Part shown: positions 480-59,411 of the stretch, piece by piece
Numbering within the stretch: position 1 is the stretch's first letter
How the letters are laid out: each line of letters starts with the position of its first letter
Virus record (IMG/VR): IMGVR_UViG_3300037258_000590
Location: 124,001 to 188,000 of that record
Length of the DNA stretch: 64,000 bases
Strand: one strand, 5' to 3'
Program-made: the position numbers and the translations under genes
The notes under the pieces: generated by a model
Told to the model about the DNA's origin: nothing
Database searches by the model: none
Seen by the model: only the letters and a program-made list of their open reading frames with translations

Positions 480-749
480 CTACTCACGCCAGGCGGCGGT
501 CTCATCCTGGTAGGCCAGGAACGCTTCGGCGGCGGCTTCCTTCGCAGCACCAGCGTTCACGGCCATGTCGGTGATGTGCGTGCCCGCCTGCTCCAAGCCC
601 TGGCCGCCAGCCCACTCAGCCAGCTCGTCCAGCTTGCGGGCCAGGGTCTCGCAGAACCCCGGCAGGCCTTCGATAGTGGCATGCAGCTCCGCGGGGTCCT
701 CCGGGATGAACCCGGCGGCGACAGTCTCGGTCAGGTCATCGATCTTCAC
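480..749 (-). CDS. TraA-like ~90 aa helical protein of actinomycete plasmids
   Basis: GFIPEDPAELHATIEGLPGFCETLARKLDELAEW pattern; similar to both halves of 746-1354 and the C-terminus of 9512-11401. Confidence 0.55.
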   Translation of the reverse strand: MKIDDLTETVAAGFIPEDPAELHATIEGLPGFCETLARKLDELAEWAGGQGLEQAGTHITDMAVNAGAAKEAAAEAFLAYQDETAAWRE

Positions 750-1354
750 CGCAAGTGACTCCTTGCATCCAGCCAGAATGCGTTGGCGCTGTGATACGTT
801 CCGCGGGCCTCATCAGCGGCCTGGCCCATTGCGGTCATCATCCCGGCTAGGGCGCCGAGCTGGTCACCGGTAACCGGCCTGTCCAGCTCCTGTTCAGCCC
901 ACACAGCCATGCGGCGTAGTTCTTCAGCTAGCAGCCCGGCCAGCTGGGAGATGGAGCCGAGCGTATCGGCCAGGGCGAAGCCAGCCGGGAAAGTGCCGTC
1001 CGGGATGAAGCCTTCAGCGACGTCCTCGGCCAGCGTTTCCGCGGGCGCGTACGAGCAGTCTTCACCTTCGAGCCAGTGCGTATTATCCGCCCGGAACCTG
1101 GCGCTGCAGGTTTCAGCAGCCGTGGCGGCTTGCTGCGGATACGGGATAAGGGCCTGAATCAGGTCACCGGGCCTGCCGCCGACGCCCCGCAACGCGGCAG
1201 CCCATTCGGCCAGCTCCGGCAGTCCGGCTGCCATGGCGCGGAACACATCCGGCAGCACGGCCAGCGCGCCGGCCAGTTCACGCGCGGTACCTGGCTGCAG
1301 GCCCGCTGACGCGCTGTCGATCATTGCTTCGATGTTGTCGCTAGGGGCTAGCAC
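746..1354 (-). CDS. Protein with two tandem TraA-like helical modules
   Basis: GTG after GGAGG; internal duplication (LPELAEWA / LRRMAVWA); VAEGFIPDG matches VAAGFIPED of the neighbouring gene. Confidence 0.6.
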   Translation of the reverse strand: MLAPSDNIEAMIDSASAGLQPGTARELAGALAVLPDVFRAMAAGLPELAEWAAALRGVGGRPGDLIQALIPYPQQAATAAETCSARFRADNTHWLEGEDCSYAPAETLAEDVAEGFIPDGTFPAGFALADTLGSISQLAGLLAEELRRMAVWAEQELDRPVTGDQLGALAGMMTAMGQAADEARGTYHSANAFWLDARSHLR

Positions 1355-1551
1355 CGGGCGCCTCCGGTTTCAGGTGCGATCTCCGCGATGTCCCAGTCGT
1401 CTCCCCGGATGTAGCGTACGGAGTACCCGCTGGAATAGCGGTGGACCTCGGCGAAGTGCAGGCAGACGACTACCTCGTCATTAGCCATGATCTCCGGGCA
1501 CCAGCCACACTGCACGAGTCCTCCGAGGATGTGCGGCTGTGACAGCACCAT
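1348..1551 (-). CDS. Small hypothetical protein with CxxC
   Basis: Tightly packed in the operon; CGWC motif. Confidence 0.5.
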   Translation of the reverse strand: MVLSQPHILGGLVQCGWCPEIMANDEVVVCLHFAEVHRYSSGYSVRYIRGDDWDIAEIAPETGGARC

Positions 1552-1554
1552 CGG

Positions 1555-2205
1555 TCAGGCTCCCAGCGCCCAGGCGGCGCGCAGCAGGCGGAGCGGGTTC
1601 CACTGGCTGCGCCGCTCAGCAGCCAGGATTACCTCAGCTTGCTTCTCATTCGCCCAGCCGTCCCACGGGACGTAGACGGCGCGACCTGACCGGCGGTACC
1701 GCCAGTAGTTGCTCTTGGTCAGGTTACATGGCTTGCATAGCGCCCGGCAGTTGAACAAGGTAGTAAGCCCGCCGAGTGACCACGGCATCGTGTGATCAAC
1801 TTCCAGGTGGTCGGCGTGTACCATCAGCCGGGCCCGGCAGCTGACGCACCGGTTCCGGTCGGCAGCGAGGACGACACGGCGCAAGCCGGCGCTGATCCGC
1901 GCGGATCGCTGTTCTTCTCGCGGGCGCCGCTTACGGTACCGCTTGCGCCAGTCTCGGGGGACGCACCCGGCTCGCAGCAGTGCAGGCAGGAAGTACAAGC
2001 CTGCCAGCAGGAGCGCAGGGATCACGAACAGCCCGGCGGCGGCCATGGCGCCCAGCCCGGCCCAGCGGAACGGCTCGTGCAGGTCGTGCCAGCCCCACAG
2101 CGGCAGAGCGAGTGCCGGGCCGAACGTGACGACGTGGCTGACGTGATAACTGCGGTACCGGCGGTACTGGCGTGAGGCTGTGCTCCGGCGGCGGACGGCG
2201 GTCAT
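1555..2205 (-). CDS. HNH endonuclease with N-terminal membrane segments
   Basis: DRNRCVSC...LEVDHTMPWSLGGLTTLFNCRALCKPCNLTKSN; two hydrophobic stretches upstream; ATG 2205 after GGAG overlaps the previous stop. Confidence 0.85.
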   Translation of the reverse strand: MTAVRRRSTASRQYRRYRSYHVSHVVTFGPALALPLWGWHDLHEPFRWAGLGAMAAAGLFVIPALLLAGLYFLPALLRAGCVPRDWRKRYRKRRPREEQRSARISAGLRRVVLAADRNRCVSCRARLMVHADHLEVDHTMPWSLGGLTTLFNCRALCKPCNLTKSNYWRYRRSGRAVYVPWDGWANEKQAEVILAAERRSQWNPLRLLRAAWALGA

Positions 2206-2504
2206 GCAGGCTCCTGACCGCGCCGGGTGGCGCTGCGGGCGATCGACCGGCACTGGTCTAGCAGGTTCCGGCCGAATTCGTTCATCTTCACGTACCGGAG
2301 CAGTTCGCGCAGCAGGTGGTCGTCCGGGTCAGGGAACACAGACCCTTCGCCTAGCGCAGCTTCCTGCACGGCGTACCGGATACAAGTCAGGGCGTGCGGG
2401 TTCAGGCGGCGCCACCAGGGGACCTGAGCGAGCTGCGCGTCGAACAGGTTCCCGGCTTCGATCCACCGCGGGTCGGTAATCCGCTGCGCGTAGGCCATGG
2501 CCAT
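2202..2504 (-). CDS. Hypothetical protein
   Basis: Stop overlaps the HNH start (ATGA); start uncertain; overlaps the tail of the DUF4326 ORF by about 100 nt. Confidence 0.45.
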   Translation of the reverse strand: MAMAYAQRITDPRWIEAGNLFDAQLAQVPWWRRLNPHALTCIRYAVQEAALGEGSVFPDPDDHLLRELLRYVKMNEFGRNLLDQCRSIARSATRRGQEPA

Positions 2505-3046
2505 AACCTGGTAACCGCCTGAACGGTGTCTTCCGGGCTGCCGTAGTCGCCGTGCTCGGCGGCGTGCTGCGCTATCGTGTCCGCGGCGATGCACCAGGCC
2601 CATTCCGGCAGTGCGGTAACCGCCCGCAGGATTTCAGGCGCCCAGCCCGGCGCGACGTCAGCGTGGCCGGCCACCGCGATGGCGTGCCCGGTGAGGGCAG
2701 CCAGGAATCCGGCGTCGCCGCCCCCGCACAGCAGGCCGGCCCGCAGCGCATACCACCAGGCGGTGCAAGCAGTACCCGGGAGCAGGAACCTGGTGGCGTC
2801 GGCCAGCCGGGCCAGGACGTCACCGTGGCAGGGCAGCGGCGCGCAATGGCAGCCGAGGCGCAAGCCGCGCAGGGCCGGCAGCATGGCCATCAGGTCCTGG
2901 CGGTGCACGATGTAACGCCAGTACCGGGCGGTCACCTGTTCCCGGTTTCCGTGCTGCCCGATGACAAACGAGTTACCGAGCGGAGTAGTCCGGTCAATCA
3001 GGACGTCATACGGCTCGCGACAGCAGTTGACGACCCGGGTGGTCAT
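2402..3046 (-). CDS. DUF4326 domain protein
   Basis: RVVNCCREPYDVLIDRTTPLGNSFVIG..GNREQV..RY...LRGLRLGCHCAPLPCHGDVLARLAD. Confidence 0.85.
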   Translation of the reverse strand: MTTRVVNCCREPYDVLIDRTTPLGNSFVIGQHGNREQVTARYWRYIVHRQDLMAMLPALRGLRLGCHCAPLPCHGDVLARLADATRFLLPGTACTAWWYALRAGLLCGGGDAGFLAALTGHAIAVAGHADVAPGWAPEILRAVTALPEWAWCIAADTIAQHAAEHGDYGSPEDTVQAVTRLWPWPTRSGLPTRGGSKPGTCSTRSSLRSPGGAA

Positions 3047-3098
3047 GATCCCGGCTCCGCGGCGTCGAGCAGGGCGACCAGGAACTTGTCCCGCAGCC

Positions 3099-3437
3099 TC
3101 ATGACGCGTGGTCTCCGTTCCCGGTGAGCGCCGCGTAATACTGACCGGCGGCAGCTACGAAACCGGCCGGGCCGGGCCAGGCGAACGCGCTGCCAGCCCA
3201 CGCCGCCCGGCTGGCGGCATCAGTCAGGTTCGCCAGGTGCCGCCCGGCCGCGCGACGGCGATTATGGCGATCTTCGCTGTTATCCGGGCCGCCCAGCAGC
3301 CAGTCCAGGACGGGCCCGGTACTGGCGAGAACAGCTGCCGGGTCGGCTTGGCATGCTGCCGCGGTCAGCGCGGACCCGATCTTGAGGGCCAGGTACCGGC
3401 TGTCGCACCGGTCCTGCTCCGCTATCTCCTGCCTCAT
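3099..3437 (-). CDS. Hypothetical protein
   Basis: ATG after ACGGAAGGAA; in operon orientation. Confidence 0.55.
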   Translation of the reverse strand: MRQEIAEQDRCDSRYLALKIGSALTAAACQADPAAVLASTGPVLDWLLGGPDNSEDRHNRRRAAGRHLANLTDAASRAAWAGSAFAWPGPAGFVAAAGQYYAALTGNGDHAS

Positions 3438-3452
3438 CTGCCATTCCTTCCG

Positions 3453-4034
3453 TCAGGGCCTGGTGATCCCCCGGGCCTGCGCGCAGCACAAGGCGGCCAG
3501 CGTGAAGCCGTCCGTTATGTCTCCGGAGGCCACGTGCATCATCAGCTCGGGGACCGGCACCCAGGTGATCGCGCTGACCTCGCCAGCGTCGGCGGTGGCG
3601 AGCTGCTTCTCGTCGTACCCGGCGGCGAACATGTGCACGACGCTGGACAGCAGCCCGGAATCCGGGGTCATCTGGCCGAGCGGCGTGAGCCACTGCGGCG
3701 CGGCGCCGAGTTCTTCCAGCAGTTCTTCCCGGGCCGTGGCCTCCGGGTCAGGCCCGTGAGCGATCCCGCGCGGCAGCCCCCATTCCCACCTCCCGGCCGG
3801 GTAGCGGTAAACCCGGACCAGGCCGGCGTCTCCTCCCGACAGCGGCAGGACCACGACTCCAGGCAGGCCCCCCGGCCGGTCGACGCGCACGTACACCCCC
3901 GGGCGGCCTGCATCGCGGAAGTACACGTCATCGGCGAACACCATGATGAACGCGTTCTCGTACACCAGGCGCTCGCGCAGGCAGATAACCGGGCTTGCCG
4001 GGTCGAGCCGCTGATTACCGGGAAAACCGCTCAT
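3453..4034 (-). CDS. NUDIX hydrolase, ADP-ribose pyrophosphatase (NudF)-like
   Basis: Nudix box LPRGIAHGPDPEATAREELLEELG; LVRVYRYPAGRWEWGLP; terminal ITDGFTLAAL. Confidence 0.9.
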   Translation of the reverse strand: MSGFPGNQRLDPASPVICLRERLVYENAFIMVFADDVYFRDAGRPGVYVRVDRPGGLPGVVVLPLSGGDAGLVRVYRYPAGRWEWGLPRGIAHGPDPEATAREELLEELGAAPQWLTPLGQMTPDSGLLSSVVHMFAAGYDEKQLATADAGEVSAITWVPVPELMMHVASGDITDGFTLAALCCAQARGITRP

Positions 4035-50379: not shown

Positions 50380-50745
50380 ATGAGCGGATGCTACGAAGCG
50401 CGGGACGGTTCTGTCTGGCGTGACGGGGAAATCATCCTGACCCTGGCCGGGGCAGGCTGGGAGGCCGCGGATGCGGTTGCCTCAGCCCTGCGCAACGAGC
50501 GCGTGAAGACGGCTGAGGCAATCGCGGACATGATCCGGCACGAGCGCAACGGCCTTGACAACGAGGATCAGGCGTCTGTCACGCCCGGCTGGATGAGCCA
50601 CGCACGGGCCAGGAAATGGCGTGACCAGGACCGGGCCAAGATCAGCGGTTACCGGATTGCGCTGAGCTACGCGCTCGGATACCCAATGGACTTCAGCAAG
50701 ACCGACGCGTTCATCGACAAGAAAGACTACTGGGAGGCGCTGTGA
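50380..50745 (+). CDS. Hypothetical protein
   Basis: AGGAGG RBS. Confidence 0.7.
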   Translation: MSGCYEARDGSVWRDGEIILTLAGAGWEAADAVASALRNERVKTAEAIADMIRHERNGLDNEDQASVTPGWMSHARARKWRDQDRAKISGYRIALSYALGYPMDFSKTDAFIDKKDYWEAL

Positions 50746-50963
50746 GCAAGGACAGCGGGCCGGTCATGCCCCTAGAGCAAAGGTGCGTCAGGCCGGGTCG
50801 CTGGGTCATCGAAGGCTGGGATGTGCGCAAGGAGGCGAAGCACCCGCATTACGGCTACTGGGTGGCCCGCCGGTTCGGCGAAGTTTTCGAGCAGCGCACC
50901 CTGGCCGGCGTGCGAGAAGAAGTCCGGGAGCGGAGGGACGATCATGACCCTGCTGGATACTGA
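50742..50963 (+). CDS. Small protein, paralogue of 59202-59411
   Basis: VMPLEQRCVRPGRWVIEG vs VMPLEQRCLYPGRWIIEG. Confidence 0.65.
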   Translation: MSKDSGPVMPLEQRCVRPGRWVIEGWDVRKEAKHPHYGYWVARRFGEVFEQRTLAGVREEVRERRDDHDPAGY

Positions 50964-51249
50964 ACAGGCAGCGGCCGGCCTGCGTACCGGGTTCACGGCC
51001 ACGTTTCCGTGCCACGCCTACGCTGTCCAGTTCCTGGAAGCCATGGCGGGAAACACGCAGGTCACGAGCACCCGGCTCAACCGGCGGAATGGCCGCGTGG
51101 TGTCTTTCGAAGCGCCAGCGGGCAGCCGGGGTGACCTGGCCAGGATTATCGGCGACATCGGGTCCACGCCTGGCGATGCTGACGGCTCGCACACGGCATA
51201 CCTGGACGAGGAGGCGTGTGCGCCGCCAGATGGCTGCCTCCGAAGGTGA
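50944..51249 (+). CDS. Hypothetical protein
   Basis: GGAGGG RBS. Confidence 0.55.
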   Translation: MTLLDTEQAAAGLRTGFTATFPCHAYAVQFLEAMAGNTQVTSTRLNRRNGRVVSFEAPAGSRGDLARIIGDIGSTPGDADGSHTAYLDEEACAPPDGCLRR

Positions 51250-51383
51250 CGTATCCCCGGCCCCAGGCCGCCACGCAAGTTTCCTAGCGCTGACCTGGCG
51301 TTAAACGCGTGCGGCCTAGGCCGGAGTTGCGCGATATGTATACGCCATGAGACAATACTCATACGAGACAGGAGACCGCCAGC

Positions 51384-51731
51384 ATGACTACGACGACTCC
51401 GGCTGAGATCAGGGAAAAGATCGATCGCGCATTGCGTGACCGTGCCATCGGCATACGGCACGAAGCCGCACTGCGCGGCAATTCCGGCGAGCACAACGCG
51501 GCGTACCGCGCTAGCCTGCGTGCCGAGGCGCAGCTCTGCGAAGACCTCGCGCACGTTGTAGCGCACACGGACCCGCAGCGGCTGGCGCAGGCACTGGATA
51601 CGGGCAAGCCAGACCAGATTCCTGCGTGGCTGGCCTACGCGGGCGTGCCGCTGGACCAGATCCCGGACGACGGCCAGCGTGCCGCCGTGCGGGCGCATCG
51701 TGCAATCGCAGCAGACTCCGGGCCGTCATGA
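51384..51731 (+). CDS. Hypothetical protein with LAYAGVPLDQIPDDGQRAAV module
   Basis: GACAGGAG RBS; shared 62-bp patch. Confidence 0.65.
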   Translation: MTTTTPAEIREKIDRALRDRAIGIRHEAALRGNSGEHNAAYRASLRAEAQLCEDLAHVVAHTDPQRLAQALDTGKPDQIPAWLAYAGVPLDQIPDDGQRAAVRAHRAIAADSGPS

Positions 51732-51789
51732 GGAAATCGCCGTACATCACGCGTGCCTTCCGGTCAGACGAACCAGGAGCCCCACGGCC

Positions 51790-52212
51790 ATGACTCAGGC
51801 AATTTCACCTAGCGCCATTACTCCTGGCCTGCCGTGCCGTACCTGCCAGGGAGCGTCGTTCTTCGATCGTGAGATAGGCAGCGCATGCCCGGCGTGCGGT
51901 GGCCGCGGCCAGGGTTCGGCGGTGCTGCTGCCATTCAGCTGCCTGGCTGAGATCACGCCCGGACTGGCGGGCTGGGCCTGGACGATCCTGTGCGAGGGAA
52001 CCCCAGTCGACGGCGGCGTCCGGGCCACTGAGGAAGCCGCCTTGGCGGCCGTAGCCGGATGGGCCGCAGCGGATAAGGCCCGGAAGGCAGACGCGATAAC
52101 AGCGGAGATCCTGTCCGACGCTATCAGCGCACTCGGATTCACCGAGCAGGCGTTCGCTGCCGCGTTCGCGGCGGTGGCGTTGTCGAGTGCATTTCAAGAG
52201 GAGGAAAGCTGA
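51790..52212 (+). CDS. CxxCxG zinc-finger protein
   Basis: CRTCQG...CPACGGRG. Confidence 0.6.
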   Translation: MTQAISPSAITPGLPCRTCQGASFFDREIGSACPACGGRGQGSAVLLPFSCLAEITPGLAGWAWTILCEGTPVDGGVRATEEAALAAVAGWAAADKARKADAITAEILSDAISALGFTEQAFAAAFAAVALSSAFQEEES

Positions 52213-52213
52213 C

Positions 52214-52462
52214 ATGACGGTCGAGCACCGTGAACACCGCGAGCTGAAGGTTAATCCTGAAGGGGTGGAGGATGTGCTGCCGCGTACGTTCCGGCTGGAC
52301 GCATTCACGGCCGCGCAGCGCCGGGACGGCCGCCAGAGAACATGGCTGGACGAGACCCCGCGCCAGCGGACCACACTGGCTGAAGGGATCACCCGTCCGG
52401 AAGCCGTAGACCTGATCAGCCAGCTGGCGGACTGGCTGGCCTGGGACGGGAAAAACGGCTGA
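52214..52462 (+). CDS. Hypothetical protein
   Basis: GAGGAGG RBS. Confidence 0.6.
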   Translation: MTVEHREHRELKVNPEGVEDVLPRTFRLDAFTAAQRRDGRQRTWLDETPRQRTTLAEGITRPEAVDLISQLADWLAWDGKNG

Positions 52463-52526
52463 CCCGCCGCTGGCAATGCCGGGCCAGCACGAGAACACGC
52501 AAGACACGCAGACAGGAGAAGCATTC

Positions 52527-53867
52527 ATGACGCTCGTTCACGCCAGCCGGCTAGACACCAGCCCGCCGGAATACACGGTAGAAGCCATGCTCCCGGATAT
52601 GGGGGTGGGCTTCGGCTACGGCAATTCGTATACGGGCAAGACGATGGTGCTCGGGATCGAGCTGTGCCTGGCCATCGCCAACGGCGTGCCGTTTTTCGGC
52701 CGCGAAAGCGTATACGGGAGCGCCGCGTGGTGCCTCGGCGAGGGGCTGCCGGACGCGGGCGTGCGGATCAAGGCGCGGCTGATCCGCGAAGCCCACGACC
52801 GGCAGCTCCAGGCGGCGCAGATCGCCAGGAAGGACGGTGACGCCGCGGCACAGGAGTGGCTGGCGGCGTTGCCGACGTACAGCGATGACCGGATGTTCGT
52901 CAAGACAACGGCATTCCAGGTCCCGTTCATCGCGGCTAACGAACCGCCGGAAGACCTGCAGCAGGCGGCCCGCGAACTGGGCCTGATCGAAGACCTTCGG
53001 CTGGTCGTGCTGGACACCGCACGCCGGTTCTCCAGCCTGTCGCTGTCGAACGGCACGACGAGCAACCGGTTCATGCTGGGCATGAGCTGGCTGGCCGCGC
53101 AGCTGCAGTGCACGGTACTGGCCATCGCGCACCCGGTCAGCAAAGGCCGCGGCGAAGTAGGCCTGCCCGGTGACACCCTGTTCGGGGCATCGGACTTCGT
53201 ATGGCGGTTCCAGTCGGCCGACGACAGCACGCCGGACGCGCCGGCCGCCATGATCATCGCGGAGAAGGTCAAGAGCGGGCCGCTATTCGACCCGATTCCG
53301 TATGAACTAGAGCGGATCAAGTGGCGTCAGCCGCCCACCGACCCGGAGACCGGCGAGGACATCCAAGGTGCCGAGCTGCTTGAGGTCAAGTCCGCTACAG
53401 TCCGGCAGCGTGAGAGCCGGCAGGCGCCTGTGAGTGCGATGCTGCTGCCGGGGATGACGCCCCGGAGGACAATGCGGCTGCCGCAGGCCGAACCGGTACC
53501 GCCGTCCAGGCCCCGGCGCCGGACCGGCATTCTCCCGGACACGTCGTTCCGCGCGGTGGTCGCGCCTGCCGAGACCGCGGTCCCGGACCCGGCCGCGGGC
53601 GCACTGGTCGCGGCCCTGATCTCGGGCGCGTGCCCGGAGAGCGCCTGCGCCGCGCTGCCTGGCGCGAGCTGCAACCCGGGCGTCCGGGGCAGCGGCGTCG
53701 TCATGCTGGACCGCGAGCCGCTGATAGCCGCGCACGTCGCGCGGATGGACGAGCGCATCACGGCCGGGACGGCCTCCCTGGACGCGGTGCTGGCCCAGTT
53801 CCCCGAAGGCACGGCTCCGGCGCTGCTGGCCCAGCGTGCGGACGAGCTGACCGGAGTGCAGGCGTGA
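52527..53867 (+). CDS. AAA_25 / RSF1010 RepA-like SF4 helicase homologue with C-terminal Zn finger
   Basis: Walker A GNSYTGKT; WCLGEG; LVVLDTARRF; AIAHPVSKG; tail CPESAC...SC...HVARM. Confidence 0.75.
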   Translation: MTLVHASRLDTSPPEYTVEAMLPDMGVGFGYGNSYTGKTMVLGIELCLAIANGVPFFGRESVYGSAAWCLGEGLPDAGVRIKARLIREAHDRQLQAAQIARKDGDAAAQEWLAALPTYSDDRMFVKTTAFQVPFIAANEPPEDLQQAARELGLIEDLRLVVLDTARRFSSLSLSNGTTSNRFMLGMSWLAAQLQCTVLAIAHPVSKGRGEVGLPGDTLFGASDFVWRFQSADDSTPDAPAAMIIAEKVKSGPLFDPIPYELERIKWRQPPTDPETGEDIQGAELLEVKSATVRQRESRQAPVSAMLLPGMTPRRTMRLPQAEPVPPSRPRRRTGILPDTSFRAVVAPAETAVPDPAAGALVAALISGACPESACAALPGASCNPGVRGSGVVMLDREPLIAAHVARMDERITAGTASLDAVLAQFPEGTAPALLAQRADELTGVQA

Positions 53868-55199: not shown

Positions 55200-55599
55200 C
55201 CTGAACCTGGACGCACGGGTAACGATAGAGCGGCTGACCAGCCTGGTCTCGGCCATCGCGCTGGGGATCCAGCTCCCGGCAGCGGAAACAATTCCAGCGC
55301 ACTCACTGCCGGGCTACCTCCCTGCCGGAACAGGGGCGGTAACCCGCGCACGCGCAGCACTGACGCGTGCGTTCAGCGTGACCTGGCCGCACCCTGACTG
55401 GGGAACGATCATCCCGGCCCTGGCCGAAGCCGAACAGTACCTGCGTGACGCCGGGCTGATGCGCAAGCCGGAGCTTATGCAGTTCGTGCACCTGGCTGCG
55501 CGAGCTGCCAGCCAGCGCCGGGGCGACGACACCCGGGCGTACATCGATAACATCCGCGGCTACCTGCCAGCTGAAGACAACGAAAAAGAGGGCCCATGA
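55192..55599 (+). CDS. Hypothetical protein
   Basis: Overlaps flanking stop and start codons. Confidence 0.55.
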   Translation: MPDLNLDARVTIERLTSLVSAIALGIQLPAAETIPAHSLPGYLPAGTGAVTRARAALTRAFSVTWPHPDWGTIIPALAEAEQYLRDAGLMRKPELMQFVHLAARAASQRRGDDTRAYIDNIRGYLPAEDNEKEGP

Positions 55600-57668
55600 G
55601 CAAGGTCTGCTACGAACAGCAGCGGTTCACCGATGCCGCCGGGGACGTCATCACCCAGGCTGAGGCGTTCTGCGCGCAATACGCAGCCCAGGGCTGGGAG
55701 CTAACGCTGCGCCAGCTGTACTACCGGTTCATCGCCACCAACACTTTCCCGGACAGCCGGACCGATCCGGTGTCGGGCACTAAGAACACCGAGCGGAATT
55801 ACAAGTGGCTGGGCGACCTGGTATCCAAGGCACGGGTGGGCGGCCTGATCGACTGGCGGCATATCACCGACAGGGGACGGGGGACAGCAGGCGGAGACAG
55901 CGGCTGGCAAAGCCCGGAGTCGATGCTGCGCAGCGCAGCGCGCGGCTACGGGATCACCCACTGGGACGGCCAGCCAGAGTACATCGAGTGCCTGCCACCT
56001 GATCAGGTGATCATCACCAGCGAGGGCGTAAAACCAGTCATCAAAGTGGAAGCCGGCGATCTCGTCCTGACCGGCAAAGGCCGGTTCCGCCCGGTGACCC
56101 GGGTCCTGGCACACGAATACGACGGACCGATGATGACGATCCGCGCAACCGGGCTGCTTCCGTTCCAGGTAACCGCCAACCACCCGGTCTGGACAGCTCA
56201 CTACGACACCTCCAAGCCGGGCTGCAAAGGCGCGACCCGGAAATTCAGCGCAGAGGGATTCGACCGGGCCGACAGCTTGCGCCCGTTTGACCTGCTAGCC
56301 GTCCCGGCACTATCCGAAACCCGCGCAGTCGGACCGGTCACCATGCGGACCAGCGGTAGCCGGGCACGGGTACTCACCATGCCGTGGAACACCAGCTTGC
56401 AAGCACTCATCGGCCTGTACCTGGCCGAAGGCTGCATCCGCAAGGACGGCCGCACCGTCCAGTTCACCATCGGCATGCACGAGCCTGAGCACTGGACCGC
56501 ACTGACAAGCTGGGCCGAGTCCGCCGGTGTCAGCACAAGCACTGCGGTGGACGGCGGCGCGCGACAGGTCTACCTGTATTCAGCCAGCCTGGCTGAATGG
56601 CTGCGCGAGCAATTCGACTGCGGCGCGCGGAACAAGCGCATCCCGCGCTGGCTGCTGGAAGCCCCCAGCGAGGAGCAGATGGAGGTCCTGCGCTGGTACT
56701 ACCGGGGCGACGGGACCGTGGACTACAGCACCAGCAACAGCCTGGTCGCCACCACCCGCAGCCTGCACCTAGCCCACCAGGTCGCGCTGATCCTGATCCG
56801 CAACGGCTACCTGCCCCGCGTGCAGAGCACCCAAGACCACGGCGATCCCCGGTACAGCATGGCGGTAAGCGGCCAGTCCGGTGCGGACCTGATGCGGCGC
56901 TGGGGTCACGAACCCCGCTCGCGAACCTACTCGTACAACCACATGCGAGCCGGAGACGGCCACATGGCCGCGCCCGTCCGGTCAGTCACGACCGAGCATT
57001 ACTCCGGGCTGGTCTACAACCTGGAAGTAGCGGACGACCACACTTACTGTGTGTCAGCGACCGTACACAATTGTTGGGTGGAGAAGGACGCACTATCCCA
57101 GATTATCGACCGGGCAGCCACGCGGTGGGACGTCACCTCATTCGCGTGCAAGGGCTCGCCGTCTACTTCAGCGATGCACGACGCGGCCTTGCGCCTGCGC
57201 GAGCAGGAACGTAACGGCAAGAAAACCACGGTCATCTACCTGGGTGACCATGACCCGACCGGGATCGACATCAGCCGTGACGTACAGGCCCGGCTAACCC
57301 TGTTCCGTTCGAGTGCGTACGTGGACCGGATCGCGCTGAACATGGATCAGGTACTGGAGCTGAACCCGCCGCCGAGCCCGGTCAAGGTCACCGACAGCCG
57401 GACTAACGGCTATGTCGAGACTTTCGGCACAGAGGAGTGCTGGGAGCTGGACGCGATCGAGCCGGCTGACCTGGACACCCTGATCGAAACAGCCATCTTG
57501 TCCCACCTGGACCTGGACCTGCGCCAGGCCCGGCTGGACCGCGAGGAGCAGGAGCGGGCCATCCTGACCGCCATTTACGAGAACTTCAGCCTTGTCCGCG
57601 GGTACCTGCGCGATGAAGGCCTGGCAGGCGATGAAGACGGCAACTACGACGATGACGAGGACAGCTGA
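55596..57668 (+). CDS. Spo11/Top6A-like protein (winged helix plus Toprim) interrupted by an intein
   Basis: LTLRQLYYRF candidate catalytic Tyr; extein YIE|CWVEKDAL; Toprim IYLGDHDPTG; WELDA. Confidence 0.75.
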   Translation: MSKVCYEQQRFTDAAGDVITQAEAFCAQYAAQGWELTLRQLYYRFIATNTFPDSRTDPVSGTKNTERNYKWLGDLVSKARVGGLIDWRHITDRGRGTAGGDSGWQSPESMLRSAARGYGITHWDGQPEYIECLPPDQVIITSEGVKPVIKVEAGDLVLTGKGRFRPVTRVLAHEYDGPMMTIRATGLLPFQVTANHPVWTAHYDTSKPGCKGATRKFSAEGFDRADSLRPFDLLAVPALSETRAVGPVTMRTSGSRARVLTMPWNTSLQALIGLYLAEGCIRKDGRTVQFTIGMHEPEHWTALTSWAESAGVSTSTAVDGGARQVYLYSASLAEWLREQFDCGARNKRIPRWLLEAPSEEQMEVLRWYYRGDGTVDYSTSNSLVATTRSLHLAHQVALILIRNGYLPRVQSTQDHGDPRYSMAVSGQSGADLMRRWGHEPRSRTYSYNHMRAGDGHMAAPVRSVTTEHYSGLVYNLEVADDHTYCVSATVHNCWVEKDALSQIIDRAATRWDVTSFACKGSPSTSAMHDAALRLREQERNGKKTTVIYLGDHDPTGIDISRDVQARLTLFRSSAYVDRIALNMDQVLELNPPPSPVKVTDSRTNGYVETFGTEECWELDAIEPADLDTLIETAILSHLDLDLRQARLDREEQERAILTAIYENFSLVRGYLRDEGLAGDEDGNYDDDEDS
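55989..57071 (+). mobile_element. Class 1 intein (361 aa) with LAGLIDADG homing endonuclease
   Basis: CLPPDQ start; VTANHP block B; LIGLYLAEG and LRWYYRGDG; VYNLEV...TVHN end; +1 Cys. Confidence 0.9.
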
Positions 57669-57670
57669 CC

Positions 57671-58180
57671 ATGACCATCCGTGAGCACATCACGCACGCC
57701 GAGACCGACCTGACCAGGCAGCGCCAGTTCAGCGTCGGTTCACAGGCATACCAGGCTGTGACCCTATCGGCGATCGCGCACGTCCTGACCGCGATTTCCC
57801 TGCAGCTGGCGGAAGCCGAGCGCCCGGCTATCCCGGGCCTGCCGCCAGGCTACAGACTGGACACCGGCCAGGACCCGGCGGGCGAGCATCGGTGGGCGTA
57901 CACGGTGACCACGCCGGACGGACGGACCATGACCACGCGGCATCTGTGGACGGCGTACGCGGGCGCCCTGGGTGCTGGCCTGGATGTGGCCCGGGAACAC
58001 GCTGCGGGCATGGCACGAGAGCACGCCGCAGCAAAGGCCGCCGCGGCGTCCGCGAACAGCTGCGAGCACGGACCAGGAGCCTGTCCGCAGGGCTGCGGCT
58101 GCCGGTGCGCTACCTGCATGCGCCAGATGAAACTGAGCCCGGCGTACCCGGGCGGCGCAACGGACGCGCGGTCATCATGA
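57671..58180 (+). CDS. Hypothetical protein with Cys-rich tail
   Basis: GAGGA RBS; CEHG..CPQGCGCRCATC. Confidence 0.6.
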   Translation: MTIREHITHAETDLTRQRQFSVGSQAYQAVTLSAIAHVLTAISLQLAEAERPAIPGLPPGYRLDTGQDPAGEHRWAYTVTTPDGRTMTTRHLWTAYAGALGAGLDVAREHAAGMAREHAAAKAAAASANSCEHGPGACPQGCGCRCATCMRQMKLSPAYPGGATDARSS

Positions 58181-58527: not shown

Positions 58528-59205
58528 GTGAAAAGCACAGAAAATCCTGTTACCGGCGAAGACGGATCCGAGCACCACCCGGCCTTCGGGATGGCTCGCG
58601 TCGGCCGGATCATGTCTACCCCGGGACAGGTGCTGTTCCAGTCGGATATCCGGCACGGCGAATACATAGAAATAACCGTGAGCGAGGCATCGCGCCGCCG
58701 CGATCTCAAACACGATTGGGTACATCCTGAGCAGGTACTCATCAAGTTCTGCCTGTCGATAGCACAATTCGCCTCGTTCATCGCCAGCAGCAGTACCGAA
58801 GGTGTTCCTGTCACGATCGGTTACGATCACGGCGACCGCCCGGGACTGCCTGCCGGATCCCGGCTTGCCCTGACCAGCACGGAAGTACACGCAGCAGCTC
58901 ATGAGGCGTTCCGGCACATCCAGGAAGCTGAAGCAGCCTACGAGGAAGCGCTGACAGGAAAAGCACCGGCAGCAGAACGCAAACGCCTCCTGGCAAACCT
59001 GCGCGCTGCGATCAGGGGTGCGGTGCCTAACGTGGATTACGCGGCTGACCAGCTGACCAGGCACGCAGAAGAAGTCGTGGAGAAATCCCGCGCGGACATC
59101 GAGGCAATGGCTGCTGCCGCCAGGAACCGGCCGCAGCTGCCCGCGCAGGAGACACCGCAGCTGCTGCACGCAGAAGCATCCCCGGCAGAATGCCAGCCGC
59201 GATGA
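58528..59205 (+). CDS. Conserved phage-type protein
   Basis: HPAFGMARVGR...LFQSDIRH...RDLKHDW...SIAQFASFI...GVPVTI. Confidence 0.75.
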   Translation: MKSTENPVTGEDGSEHHPAFGMARVGRIMSTPGQVLFQSDIRHGEYIEITVSEASRRRDLKHDWVHPEQVLIKFCLSIAQFASFIASSSTEGVPVTIGYDHGDRPGLPAGSRLALTSTEVHAAAHEAFRHIQEAEAAYEEALTGKAPAAERKRLLANLRAAIRGAVPNVDYAADQLTRHAEEVVEKSRADIEAMAAAARNRPQLPAQETPQLLHAEASPAECQPR

Positions 59206-59411
59206 ACAGACGCGAGCAAGGCAAAGTAATGCCGCTGGAACAACGATGCCTGTACCCCGGACGATGGATAATCGAAGGTTACGGTGTATACCAGCGCAAA
59301 GGCCGCAGAGCAGTGAACTGGCAATCCGAATGGCACGTCATCGGACACCCAGGCGTGATCCGGCGAACCCTGCCAGAAATCAGGGACTGGATCCGGGAGC
59401 AGGCGCAATGA
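59202..59411 (+). CDS. Small protein, paralogue of 50742-50963
   Basis: ATGA overlap; shared motif. Confidence 0.6.
   Translation: MNRREQGKVMPLEQRCLYPGRWIIEGYGVYQRKGRRAVNWQSEWHVIGHPGVIRRTLPEIRDWIREQAQ

What the first reader, a model, noticed from the sequence alone, without database searches (positions are those of the whole stretch)
55596..57668. Stand-alone Spo11/Top6A-like protein with a full LAGLIDADG intein beside the Toprim glutamate
The intein sits four residues before the conserved Glu of CWVEKDAL. No Top6B or Wadjet (JetABC) partner is visible in the window. An intein at this site implies a conserved, functionally important nuclease or topoisomerase-like activity that I cannot assign; this insertion site is unfamiliar to me.
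Basis: partly seen in the sequence, partly recalled or inferred. Interest (0 to 1): 0.62.

Follow-up and report, generated by a model that had tools for sequence, protein, structure and literature searches.

The report
Intein-split Mini-A topoisomerase-like phage gene
A soil jumbo phage carries a stand-alone topoisomerase VI A / Spo11-like gene of the already named but uncharacterised "Mini-A" family. It is interrupted by a complete self-splicing, self-homing intein in the first strand of its metal-binding Toprim domain: a textbook kind of element at a site I found described nowhere.

Summary
Window 55596-57668 (+) is one 690-aa ORF made of three parts:
- N-extein, aa 1-131
- a 361-aa class-1 intein with a two-motif LAGLIDADG endonuclease, aa 132-492 (Cys1 ... 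His-Asn)
- C-extein, aa 493-690, starting Cys+1 three residues before the Toprim Glu (E496)

The extein meets every published sequence criterion of the "Mini-A" family (Takahashi et al., PMC7671362): about 300 aa, RxxYY, E...DxDxxG, xWELDAL box, no B subunit, viral. A close intein-less homologue folds like Topo VI A. It is also predicted to form a homodimer (0.60 against 0.01 for the best control).

The window lies in a complete 210-kb soil phage with terminal repeats. That genome has no detectable GHKL ATPase, no JetABC and no other Toprim or topoisomerase gene, and it carries about six inteins.

At least 23 other metagenomic Mini-A proteins carry a homologous intein at this site or two residues downstream. 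Thousands of Mini-A proteins lack it.

The endonuclease domain is under purifying selection (dN/dS about 0.25).

The only published "Toprim" phage intein is in an unrelated primase at a different position.

Verdict: a real, ordinary-type intein in a new host protein. What Mini-A does remains the open question.

The parts
55596..57668 (+). Whole precursor gene (690 aa plus stop): a Mini-A protein interrupted by an intein
   Evidence: ORF list and translation. PHROG 6247 'DNA topoisomerase' matches at E 2e-76 in two stretches.
55588..55592 (+). Shine-Dalgarno-like GAGGG, 3 nt before the ATG
   Evidence: Read directly from the sequence. Weak evidence only.
55596..55988 (+). N-extein, aa 1-131: short 5Y-CAP-like domain plus linker. 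It ends in E131, which is invariant in the family.
   Evidence: Boundaries. E131 is invariant in alignment A1 and its equivalent is invariant in A2.
55707..55730 (+). Catalytic-tyrosine motif L-R-Q-L-Y-Y-R-F (R39, Y42, Y43), the RxxY/FY signature of type IIB A subunits
   Evidence: Position. The Arg and the second Tyr are invariant in 119 intein-less homologues. The motif is defined in PMC7671362.
55989..57071 (+). Intein, aa 132-492 (361 aa), class 1: Cys1, block B T193-x-x-H196, block F, block G His491-Asn492
   Evidence: The fold matches solved inteins that carry an endonuclease. It is absent from intein-less alleles.
56316..56915 (+). LAGLIDADG homing-endonuclease domain inside the intein (about aa 241-440), two alpha-beta-beta-alpha-beta-beta-alpha repeats
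   Evidence: Pfam LAGLIDADG_3. The secondary-structure pattern is modelled with pLDDT above 90. dN/dS is 0.25 against the 79%-identical homologue.
56406..56435 (+). LAGLIDADG motif 1 (L-I-G-L-Y-L-A-E-G-C), acidic residue E278
   Evidence: Position. G273, Y275, A277, E278 and G279 are conserved in at least 90% of the A1 rows.
56685..56717 (+). LAGLIDADG motif 2 (V-L-R-W-Y-Y-R-G-D-G-T), acidic residue D372
   Evidence: Position. G371 and D372 are conserved in at least 90% of the A1 rows.
57072..57665 (+). C-extein, aa 493-690: Toprim domain plus C-terminal helices. It starts with the +1 nucleophile C493.
57072..57095 (+). C-W-V-E-K-D-A-L: second half of Toprim strand beta-1, with the metal-binding Glu E496 and K497
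   Evidence: E496 and K497 are invariant. In the homologue model, strand beta-1 is residues 104-110 and the Glu is residue 111.
57240..57263 (+). Toprim DxDxxG motif (L-G-D-H-D-P-T-G; D551, D553, G556)
   Evidence: Invariant columns. Position.
57438..57458 (+). T2BI box C-W-E-L-D-A-I, the xWELDAL signature that separates Mini-A from Topo VI and Topo VIII
   Evidence: Position. W616, E617 and D619 are invariant. The box is defined in PMC7671362.

Best explanation
The gene encodes a Mini-A protein, the virus-borne, B-subunit-less branch of the type IIB topoisomerase A-subunit / Spo11 family. Its reading frame is invaded by a bifunctional class-1 intein.

Shown:
- The precursor is N-extein, then Hint and LAGLIDADG intein, then C-extein.
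- The intein sits in the middle of Toprim strand beta-1, between the invariant E131 and position +1, three residues before the metal-binding E496.
- All splice-site residues, both endonuclease acidic residues and all Mini-A catalytic residues (R39, Y43, E496, D551, D553, WELDA box) are intact and conserved in relatives.

Inferred:
- The precursor is inactive, because beta-1 and part of the predicted dimer interface cannot form until splicing.
- Splicing (Cys132 N-S shift, attack by Cys493, Asn492 cyclisation) joins E131 to C493 and yields a protein of about 329 aa.
- That protein dimerises like Topo VI A / Spo11 and cuts DNA by Mg2+-dependent attack of Tyr43, forming a 5'-phosphotyrosyl link without an ATPase gate.
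- The released intein endonuclease cuts intein-less Mini-A alleles of co-infecting phages at the conserved E-V-W-V-E-K coding stretch and is copied in by repair (homing).

Biological role (least certain): DNA breakage or rejoining in the phage replication and recombination module. Examples are starting recombination-dependent replication, or relaxing or unlinking phage DNA.
For: Anatomy and boundaries.

Mini-A identity:
- PHROG 6247 matches at E 2e-76.
- The motif set matches the published definition.
- At least 7,999 intein-less relatives were found, and 4,553 50%-identity cluster representatives.
- The genome is viral: a complete 210-kb phage with a 127-bp terminal repeat.
- No GHKL ATPase, no JetABC, and no other Toprim or topoisomerase gene was detected in it.

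Fold:
- The AF2 model of an intein-less homologue (57% identical in the extein columns) has pLDDT 93.9.
- Foldseek's top hits are Topo VI A chains, probability 1.00 over 300-310 columns.

Dimer: score 0.60 against 0.01 for the best of 3 controls. This mark was reached by 20 of 30 proteins solved as pairs and 1 of 23 solved as single chains. The runs share at least 49% of their contacts and pLDDT is at least 73. The interface includes the Glu at position -1 of the insertion site.

Precursor model: the intein is confident (pLDDT above 90). The flanking extein residues 117-130 and 494-498 fall below 50 and form no strand.

Intein:
- It matches TliVMA, PI-SceI and PI-PfuI.
- Homologous inteins at the same site occur in 20 further proteins at 34-81% intein identity.
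- dN/dS is 0.25 in the endonuclease domain and 0.12 in the N-terminal Hint part.
- The nearest intein-less allele is identical at 35 of the central 40 bp around the site.
- Independent soil runs hold contigs that span both junctions.

Context: in Pseudomonas phage NP1 the Mini-A gene lies between the DNA ligase gene (one small ORF intervening) and the Sak4 recombinase gene. In Roseobacter phage RDJL Phi 1 it lies close to the DNA polymerase and helicase genes. Here an AAA_25 RecA-like ATPase lies 1.7 kb upstream.
Against: - No Mini-A protein has been characterised biochemically (reviews up to 2024). DNA cleavage, the covalent intermediate and the biological role are therefore inference.
- No Pfam Topo VI A model reaches its cut-off. 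Only recurrent sub-threshold hits were seen, and a sequence profile finds no solved structure.
- The fold evidence comes from a homologue, not from the window's own spliced product. The global TM-score to Topo VI A is only 0.37, because the domain orientations differ.
- The CAP-like domain was not tested on its own.
- The dimer pass may reflect the model's memory of Topo VI A / Spo11 dimers.
- Splicing and endonuclease activity were not tested. Block F has Asn where many inteins have Asp.
- dN/dS rests on one sequence pair.
- No conserved neighbouring gene was found, so the context says little about the role.
Confidence: 0.8

Rival explanations
1. Mini-A is only half of an enzyme. It needs an undiscovered, non-GHKL 'Mini-B' or a host protein, and then acts as a true strand-passing topoisomerase.
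For: All other type IIB enzymes pair the A subunit with an ATPase B subunit. The authors of the family leave this possibility open. The phage has dozens of unannotatable genes around Mini-A, including one that is translationally coupled downstream (57671-58180).
Against: - No GHKL or transducer domain was found in the complete 210-kb genome.
- Mini-A lacks the N-terminal CAP part that binds Top6B.
- No neighbouring gene is shared with the loci of three relatives, at 79%, 58% and 57% identity.
- The phrog_6452 neighbour occurs in phages other than the Mini-A-bearing ones.
- A homodimer is predicted without any partner.
Confidence: 0.2
2. The extein is a JetD/MksG-type hydrolytic nuclease rather than a tyrosine transesterase. 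It would be used against host or competitor DNA.
Against: - The RxxYY tyrosine motif is invariant across 119 plus 25 homologues. From my own knowledge, JetD and MksG lack a catalytic tyrosine.
- No JetA, JetB or JetC was found in the genome.
- The PADLOC JetD hit is far from significant (E 0.03).
- Foldseek ranks Topo VI A first over the full length.
Confidence: 0.12
3. The intein is a decaying remnant, either splice-dead or endonuclease-dead. The gene would then be inactivated, or the intein fixed and immobile.
For: Inteins often lose endonuclease activity after fixation. One relative (P0025) has lost most of the endonuclease domain. No intein-less variant of this phage was seen in four soil runs. 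Pfam Hint and Intein_splicing scores are below their cut-offs.
Against: - All splice residues (C132, T193, H196, H491, N492, C493) and both LAGLIDADG acidic residues are intact and conserved in at least 90% of relatives.
- dN/dS of the endonuclease domain is 0.25, like the exteins.
- The frame is open over 690 codons.
- The extein catalytic residues are also intact, which is not expected of a dead gene.
Confidence: 0.08
4. The intein has been co-opted as a conditional switch that times activation of a dangerous DNA-breaking enzyme during infection, for example through redox control by the Cys1 / Cys+1 pair.
For: The insertion splits the catalytic strand and a predicted dimer contact. Both nucleophiles are cysteines. 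Conditional splicing of this kind is known for other inteins (SufB, cited in PMC5050341).
Against: Thousands of Mini-A genes function without any intein. Intein-bearing alleles are well under 1% of those found. An active-looking homing endonuclease is enough to explain persistence. There is no direct evidence for regulation.
Confidence: 0.08

Closest known systems
Mini-A proteins (Takahashi et al., NAR Genom Bioinform 2019/2020, PMC7671362), e.g. Pseudomonas phage NP1 gp49 and the Listeria prophage Mini-A
   Same: An extein of about 300 aa (here about 329) with a short 5Y-CAP plus Toprim, RxxYY, E...DxDxxG and the xWELDAL box. There is no B subunit and the gene is virus-encoded. It matches the same PHROG (6247).
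   Different: This copy, and at least 23 metagenomic relatives, is interrupted by a 361-aa intein. The describing paper does not mention inteins at all (0 occurrences). The host here is a 210-kb high-GC soil phage rather than the 40-90-kb phages listed so far.
Topo VI A subunit / Spo11 (PDB 1d3y, 2zbk, 9o8p, 8uru)
   Same: The same two-domain architecture and catalytic residues. These are the best structural matches. A dimer is predicted.
   Different: The protein is about 100 residues shorter and lacks the B-binding N-terminal CAP part. No Top6B was found. It scores below the Pfam TP6A_N cut-off. Sequence identity is 12-17%.
HEN-bearing class-1 inteins such as TliVMA, PI-SceI and PI-PfuI (PDB 7qsu, 1vde, 1dq3)
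   Same: A Hint splicing domain with a nested two-motif LAGLIDADG endonuclease, Cys1, terminal His-Asn and a +1 Cys. The fold match is E 5e-22, TM 0.75 normalised to the target.
   Different: The host protein and insertion site differ. Sequence identity is only 11-17%.
The 'TOPRIM' intein of cluster A1 mycobacteriophages (BillKnuckles gp54; Kelley et al. 2016, PMC5050341)
   Same: A phage intein placed at the Toprim glutamate motif of a DNA-metabolism protein.
   Different: The extein is a DnaG-like primase of about 200 aa, unrelated to Mini-A. That intein lies two residues after the Toprim Glu (E-G-E|C), not three before it. The two inteins share no significant similarity beyond block A.
JetD / MksG of Wadjet (PDB 7til, 8b7f)
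   Different: No JetABC is present. The JetD HMM is not matched. Mini-A keeps the invariant tyrosine motif.

Membership tests
Mini-A (type IIB topoisomerase A-like, viral) | Length of about 300 aa, shorter than Top6A | tested here: met
   The exteins are 131 + 198 = 329 aa. Intein-less relatives are 300-340 aa.
Mini-A (type IIB topoisomerase A-like, viral) | RxxY/FY motif with the catalytic tyrosine | tested here: met
   R39-Q-L-Y42-Y43. The Arg and the second Tyr are invariant in A2.
Mini-A (type IIB topoisomerase A-like, viral) | Toprim Glu followed by DxDxxG | tested here: met
   E496, D551-H-D553-P-T-G556, all invariant.
Mini-A (type IIB topoisomerase A-like, viral) | C-terminal T2BI box of the xWELDAL type | tested here: met
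   C615-W-E-L-D-A-I621. W, E and D are invariant. Definition.
Mini-A (type IIB topoisomerase A-like, viral) | No B (GHKL) subunit, and encoded by a virus | tested here: met
   No PF02518, PF13589 or PF09239 hit in the complete 210-kb phage.
Mini-A (type IIB topoisomerase A-like, viral) | Top6A-like fold (CAP plus Toprim) | tested here: met
Mini-A (type IIB topoisomerase A-like, viral) | DNA cleavage or topoisomerase activity | not testable with these tools
   No biochemistry is published for any member.
Topo VI A / Spo11 in the strict sense | Match to the curated TP6A_N / Top6A models | tested here: not met
   No Pfam hit for the exteins. TP6A_N appears only below threshold, in 8 of 119 relatives, best E 0.055. 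A profile search against PDB sequences found nothing.
Topo VI A / Spo11 in the strict sense | Partner B subunit (Top6B / TOPOVIBL) | tested here: not met
Wadjet JetD / MksG | JetD HMM match and JetA, JetB, JetC partners | tested here: not met
   PADLOC JetD3 E 0.03 only. No DUF3375, DUF4194 or SbcC_Walker_B in the genome.
Class-1 intein with LAGLIDADG homing endonuclease | Precise in-frame insertion that is absent from orthologues | tested here: met
   The A1 alignment includes the intein-less allele P0024. 119 intein-less homologues and P0158 also lack it.
Class-1 intein with LAGLIDADG homing endonuclease | Splice residues: Cys1, block B TxxH, terminal His-Asn, +1 Cys/Ser/Thr | tested here: met
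   C132, T193/H196, H491-N492, C493. All are conserved in at least 90% of the A1 rows.
Class-1 intein with LAGLIDADG homing endonuclease | Hint fold with a nested double LAGLIDADG fold, both acidic residues present | tested here: met
   Precursor model. Matches to 7qsu, 1vde and 1dq3. E278 and D372 are conserved. LAGLIDADG_3 is above its cut-off, while Hint_2 and Intein_splicing are below theirs.
Class-1 intein with LAGLIDADG homing endonuclease | Protein splicing and site-specific DNA cleavage | not testable with these tools
   Indirect support only: dN/dS 0.12-0.30 across the intein.
Published phage 'TOPRIM' intein site (Kelley 2016) | Same extein family and same insertion point | tested here: not met
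   BillKnuckles gp54 is a DnaG-like primase with the intein after E-G-E. There is no extein similarity.

The most novel reading that the evidence does not exclude
Mini-A is an autonomous, B-subunit-free homodimeric DNA breaker, a viral counterpart of Spo11. It makes protein-linked double-strand breaks to start recombination-dependent replication of the phage. In this lineage the intein also keeps the enzyme inert until splicing rebuilds Toprim strand beta-1 and the dimer contact.
Probability: 0.15. Interest if true: 0.75.

Novelty: new member of a known kind. Interest (0 to 1): 0.4.

Why it matters
- Inteins settle in the most conserved, least mutable codons of important DNA-metabolism proteins. 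A long-lived, diversified intein lineage in the catalytic Toprim strand of Mini-A is indirect evidence of two things. First, this strand is under strong constraint. Second, Mini-A alleles meet and recombine in co-infections.
- Mini-A is very abundant (thousands of 50%-identity clusters) but functionally unknown. It bears on the origin of type IIB topoisomerases and Spo11.
- The precursor and the spliced product would give a natural on/off pair for biochemical work.
- The intein lineage adds a new extein and two adjacent insertion points to intein catalogues.
- The host genome is a complete jumbo soil actinophage-like virus with about six inteins.

Tried and rejected
- **Spliced extein not handed to remote tools.** A joined extein has no reference, so no remote search or fold tool received one. 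HHpred-like analysis of the window's own spliced product was left out. Natural intein-less homologues (P0024, P0038-P0156) were used instead. Joining was done only inside scripts: for one local pairwise identity (58% to P0158) and as an unused variable.
- **PDB sequence searches found nothing.** A single-sequence search and a profile search both failed to find Topo VI A. Only the fold search did.
- **First model starts late.** It begins at P0024 residue 140, although the Mini-A part starts at residue 117. The first 23 residues are therefore missing from the model.
- **No conserved partner gene found.** The phrog_6452 neighbour (58528-59205) occurs in different phages from Mini-A. The loci of P0002, P0024 and P0158 share no neighbours with the window.
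- **PADLOC.** No defence-system assignment.
- **No intein-less variant seen in soil runs**. These were contigs only, which cannot show rare variants, so this is not evidence of fixation.
- **Cluster look-up.** It gave no organism names for the NCBI-derived relatives.
- **Literature.** Searches for an intein in Mini-A, Top6A or type IIB topoisomerases gave nothing relevant. This is an absence in the held library only.
- **Intein versus extein divergence.** Pairwise identities correlate only weakly (Spearman 0.27), and the intein tree is poorly resolved at depth. No statement is made on vertical against horizontal spread.
Full report
**1. What is there**

Window 55596-57668 (+) is a single open frame of 690 codons. 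A GAGGG stretch lies just upstream, and the start overlaps the stop of the preceding ORF in an ATGA. The next gene starts three bases after the stop.

The protein divides cleanly into three parts:
- aa 1-131, the N-extein
- aa 132-492, a 361-aa insert that starts with Cys and ends His-Asn
- aa 493-690, the C-extein, which starts Cys-Trp-Val-Glu-Lys

The PHROG family 6247 ('DNA topoisomerase', 303 positions) matches at E 2e-76 in two stretches that flank the insert. Pfam sees only the insert: LAGLIDADG_3 above its cut-off, and Hint models below theirs. N492 is four residues before E496, and the junction itself is three residues before it.

**2. The genome**

The window is bases 124001-188000 of a 210,383-bp IMG/VR virus record. 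The record has a 127-bp direct terminal repeat and is rated 100% complete. GC content is about 66%.

Its large terminase is at most 35% identical to those of Rhodococcus, Arthrobacter, Gordonia and Mycobacterium phages. It is therefore a jumbo phage, probably of an actinobacterium, with no close cultured relative.

Near-identical DNA occurs in four soil-metagenome runs from four studies, one of which may be the source. Contigs from two other runs cross the intein-extein junctions at over 99% identity, and one contig spans both junctions.

**3. The extein is a Mini-A protein**

Takahashi et al. (PMC7671362) defined Mini-A as virus-encoded homologues of the type IIB topoisomerase A subunit. The defining features are a length of about 300 aa, a short 5Y-CAP, a Toprim domain, RxxY/FY, E...DxDxxG, a C-terminal xWELDAL 'T2BI' box, and no B subunit.

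The window protein has all of them: R39-x-x-Y42-Y43, E496, D551-x-D553-x-x-G556 and C-W-E-L-D-A-I (615-621). These residues are invariant in 119 intein-less relatives.

The family is very large:
- 7,999 of the 8,000 candidates scored were significant in the word-indexed search.
- The exhaustive search with the C-extein found 4,553 representatives of 50%-identity clusters at E <= 1e-3, and 2,069 at E <= 1e-10.
- 76 isolated-phage records carry it, among them NP1-like Pseudomonas, Xylella, Roseobacter, Microbacterium, Curtobacterium and Listeria phages, all below 60% identity.

No Pfam family covers it. Relatives give only recurrent sub-threshold hits to DUF2399, Toprim_2 and TP6A_N.

**4. Fold**

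A joined extein has no reference, so I did not hand one to any search or fold tool. I modelled a natural intein-less homologue instead (P0024:140-439, 57% identical to the window's extein columns) with a 119-row alignment. Mean pLDDT was 93.9. By oversight this model lacks the first 23 residues of the Mini-A part.

Foldseek's four best PDB matches are Topo VI A chains, at probability 1.00 over 300-310 alignment columns. TM-scores are low (0.37) because the two domains are oriented differently.

|---|---|
| M. jannaschii Top6A | 10.7 |
| MksG | 10.6 |
| JetD | 10.2 |
| Spo11 | 8.8 |

The CAP half was not tested separately.

A two-copy prediction supports a homodimer. The score was 0.60 against 0.01 for the best of three controls. 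This mark was reached by 20 of 30 proteins solved as pairs and by 1 of 23 solved as single chains. The runs share at least 49% of their contacts, and pLDDT is at least 73. This may partly reflect the model's memory of Top6A or Spo11 dimers.

**5. No partner**

The complete genome has no hit, even at E <= 1, to any of the following. The control genomes did respond to each search.
- HATPase_c, HATPase_c_3 and the Topo VI B transducer
- JetA, JetB and JetC models
- Toprim, Toprim_2 and the type IIA topoisomerase A domain

Mini-A is thus the only topoisomerase-like gene detectable.

The neighbours are mostly unannotatable. An AAA_25 RecA-like ATPase lies at 52476-53867, and a phrog_6452 protein of unknown function at 58528-59205. 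The phrog_6452 protein is found in phages other than those carrying Mini-A. The loci of three relatives share no neighbouring genes with the window.

In annotated phages the gene sits among replication and recombination genes. In NP1 these are ligase, Sak4, a Cas4-like exonuclease, helicase and primase. In RDJL Phi 1 they are DNA polymerase and helicase.

**6. The intein**

The insert has these features:
- Cys1
- block B T193-x-x-H196
- a block F (V-Y-N-L-E-V...D-H-T-Y-C)
- His491-Asn492 and Cys+1
- two LAGLIDADG motifs with E278 and D372

All are conserved in at least 90% of the aligned relatives.

In the precursor model the intein is confident. It shows the two alpha-beta-beta-alpha-beta-beta-alpha repeats of a LAGLIDADG enzyme. 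It matches solved endonuclease-bearing inteins: TliVMA at E 5e-22 and TM 0.75 normalised to the target, then PI-SceI, PhoVMA, PI-PfuI and others.

Against the 79%-identical relative P0002, dN/dS is as follows:

| Region | dN/dS |
|---|---|
| N-terminal Hint part | 0.12 |
| Endonuclease domain | 0.25 |
| C-terminal Hint part | 0.30 |
| Exteins | 0.25-0.40 |

The endonuclease is therefore under purifying selection, although this rests on a single pair.

**7. The site**

In the homologue model, Toprim strand beta-1 is residues 104-110 (H-Y-V-E-V-W-V), followed by the metal-binding Glu at 111. The intein lies between the invariant Glu (E131 here) and the next residue, in the middle of beta-1.

Intein-less alleles have Val at +1. 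Intein-bearing alleles have Cys.

In the precursor model, residues 117-130 and 494-498 fall below pLDDT 50 and form no strand. The Glu at -1 is part of the predicted dimer interface. I therefore infer that the precursor cannot be active and that splicing is obligatory.

**8. Spread**

Twenty further proteins (P0002-P0016, P0018-P0021 and P0023; 34-81% intein identity) carry the intein at the same point. The figure excludes the mini-intein P0025 and the fragment P0221.

Three others (P0017, P0022, P0229) carry a homologous intein two residues downstream (E-V-W|C-E-K), immediately before the Toprim Glu.

P0025 has lost most of the endonuclease domain.

Of the 150 best cluster representatives, only three clearly carry an intein (P0006, P0229 and the fragment P0221). 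None of the 76 isolated-phage Mini-A genes appears among the phage hits of the intein.

The closest intein-less allele found is P0158, 63% identical in the C-extein. It has the same P-E-Y-I-E flank and is identical at 35 of the central 40 bp around the site. This is a plausible homing target.

**9. Comparison with what is published**

The Mini-A paper does not mention inteins. Searches for 'intein' with Mini-A, Top6A or type IIB topoisomerase found nothing relevant.

The one published phage 'TOPRIM' intein is in cluster A1 mycobacteriophages (Kelley et al., PMC5050341). It lies in a DnaG-like primase, two residues after the Toprim Glu. Both that extein and that intein are unrelated to the ones here.

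InBase and other catalogues could not be consulted.

**10. Verdict**

This is a genuine, apparently functional, classical intein in a new host protein and site. The host protein belongs to a named family whose function is still unknown.

The mechanism of the intein part is well supported by analogy and conservation. The DNA-cleaving, dimeric, ATP-independent mode of Mini-A and its role in phage replication or recombination remain inference.

Noticed in passing
L018:1-2892 (-), L008:961-3237 (-), L003:967-3171 (-), L004:1-2661 (-) (genome coordinates 572-3463, 51041-53317, 79200-81404, 107015-109855; all outside the window): The same phage has about five more inteins in four other open frames: two in a 964-aa protein, one in a 759-aa protein, one in a group-1 glycosyltransferase and one in the large terminase. 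That makes about six in one 210-kb genome. The terminase intein and the second intein of the 964-aa protein have no N-terminal Cys but do have a Cys in block F, so they may be class 3.
   Followed up: partly
P0017, P0022, P0229 (metagenomic relatives): A homologous intein occupies a second site two residues downstream (E-V-W|C-E-K), directly before the Toprim Glu. This resembles the adjacent TerL1-a and TerL1-b sites of mycobacteriophages. The tree does not resolve whether this arose from one shift or several.
   Followed up: partly
P0025 (metagenomic relative): An intein at the same site has lost most of the endonuclease domain. It looks like a mini-intein derivative, although the record is N-terminally truncated.
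   Followed up: no
window 50742-50963 (+) and 59190-59411 (+): Two small ORFs share an almost identical N-terminal stretch (M-P-L-E-Q-R-C-x-x-P-G-R-W-x-I-E-G). They form a small paralogous gene family either side of the Mini-A region. Function is unknown.
   Followed up: no
window about 55511 (run X3); L015, L013, L019: The contig from run X3 diverges from the window just upstream of the gene, at 55511. The 79%-identical intein-bearing gene in L015 has entirely different neighbours. The Mini-A cassette therefore moves between phage backgrounds as a module.
   Followed up: partly
window 52476-53867 (+): A 463-aa AAA_25 (RecA/RepA-like) ATPase lies two or three ORFs upstream of Mini-A. It has weak PHROG links to polymerase/primase families and is the only other recognisable DNA-metabolism gene nearby.
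   Followed up: partly
P0256 (metagenomic relative): The C-terminal Toprim half of a Mini-A follows an N-terminal region with motifs typical of C5 DNA methyltransferases. This is either a fusion or a chimeric gene call.
   Followed up: no
L012:4935-5561 (Roseobacter phage RDJL Phi 1 gp26): The annotated 'DNA topoisomerase' is only 208 aa, the Toprim half. An opposite-strand ORF is annotated where the CAP domain would be expected. This may be a truncated Mini-A or a mis-annotation.
   Followed up: no
P0005, P0013, P0161, P0162, P0177 and others: Several relatives carry an extra insertion of about 40-60 aa in the Toprim domain, after the helix that follows DxDxxG. It is absent from the window protein.
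   Followed up: no
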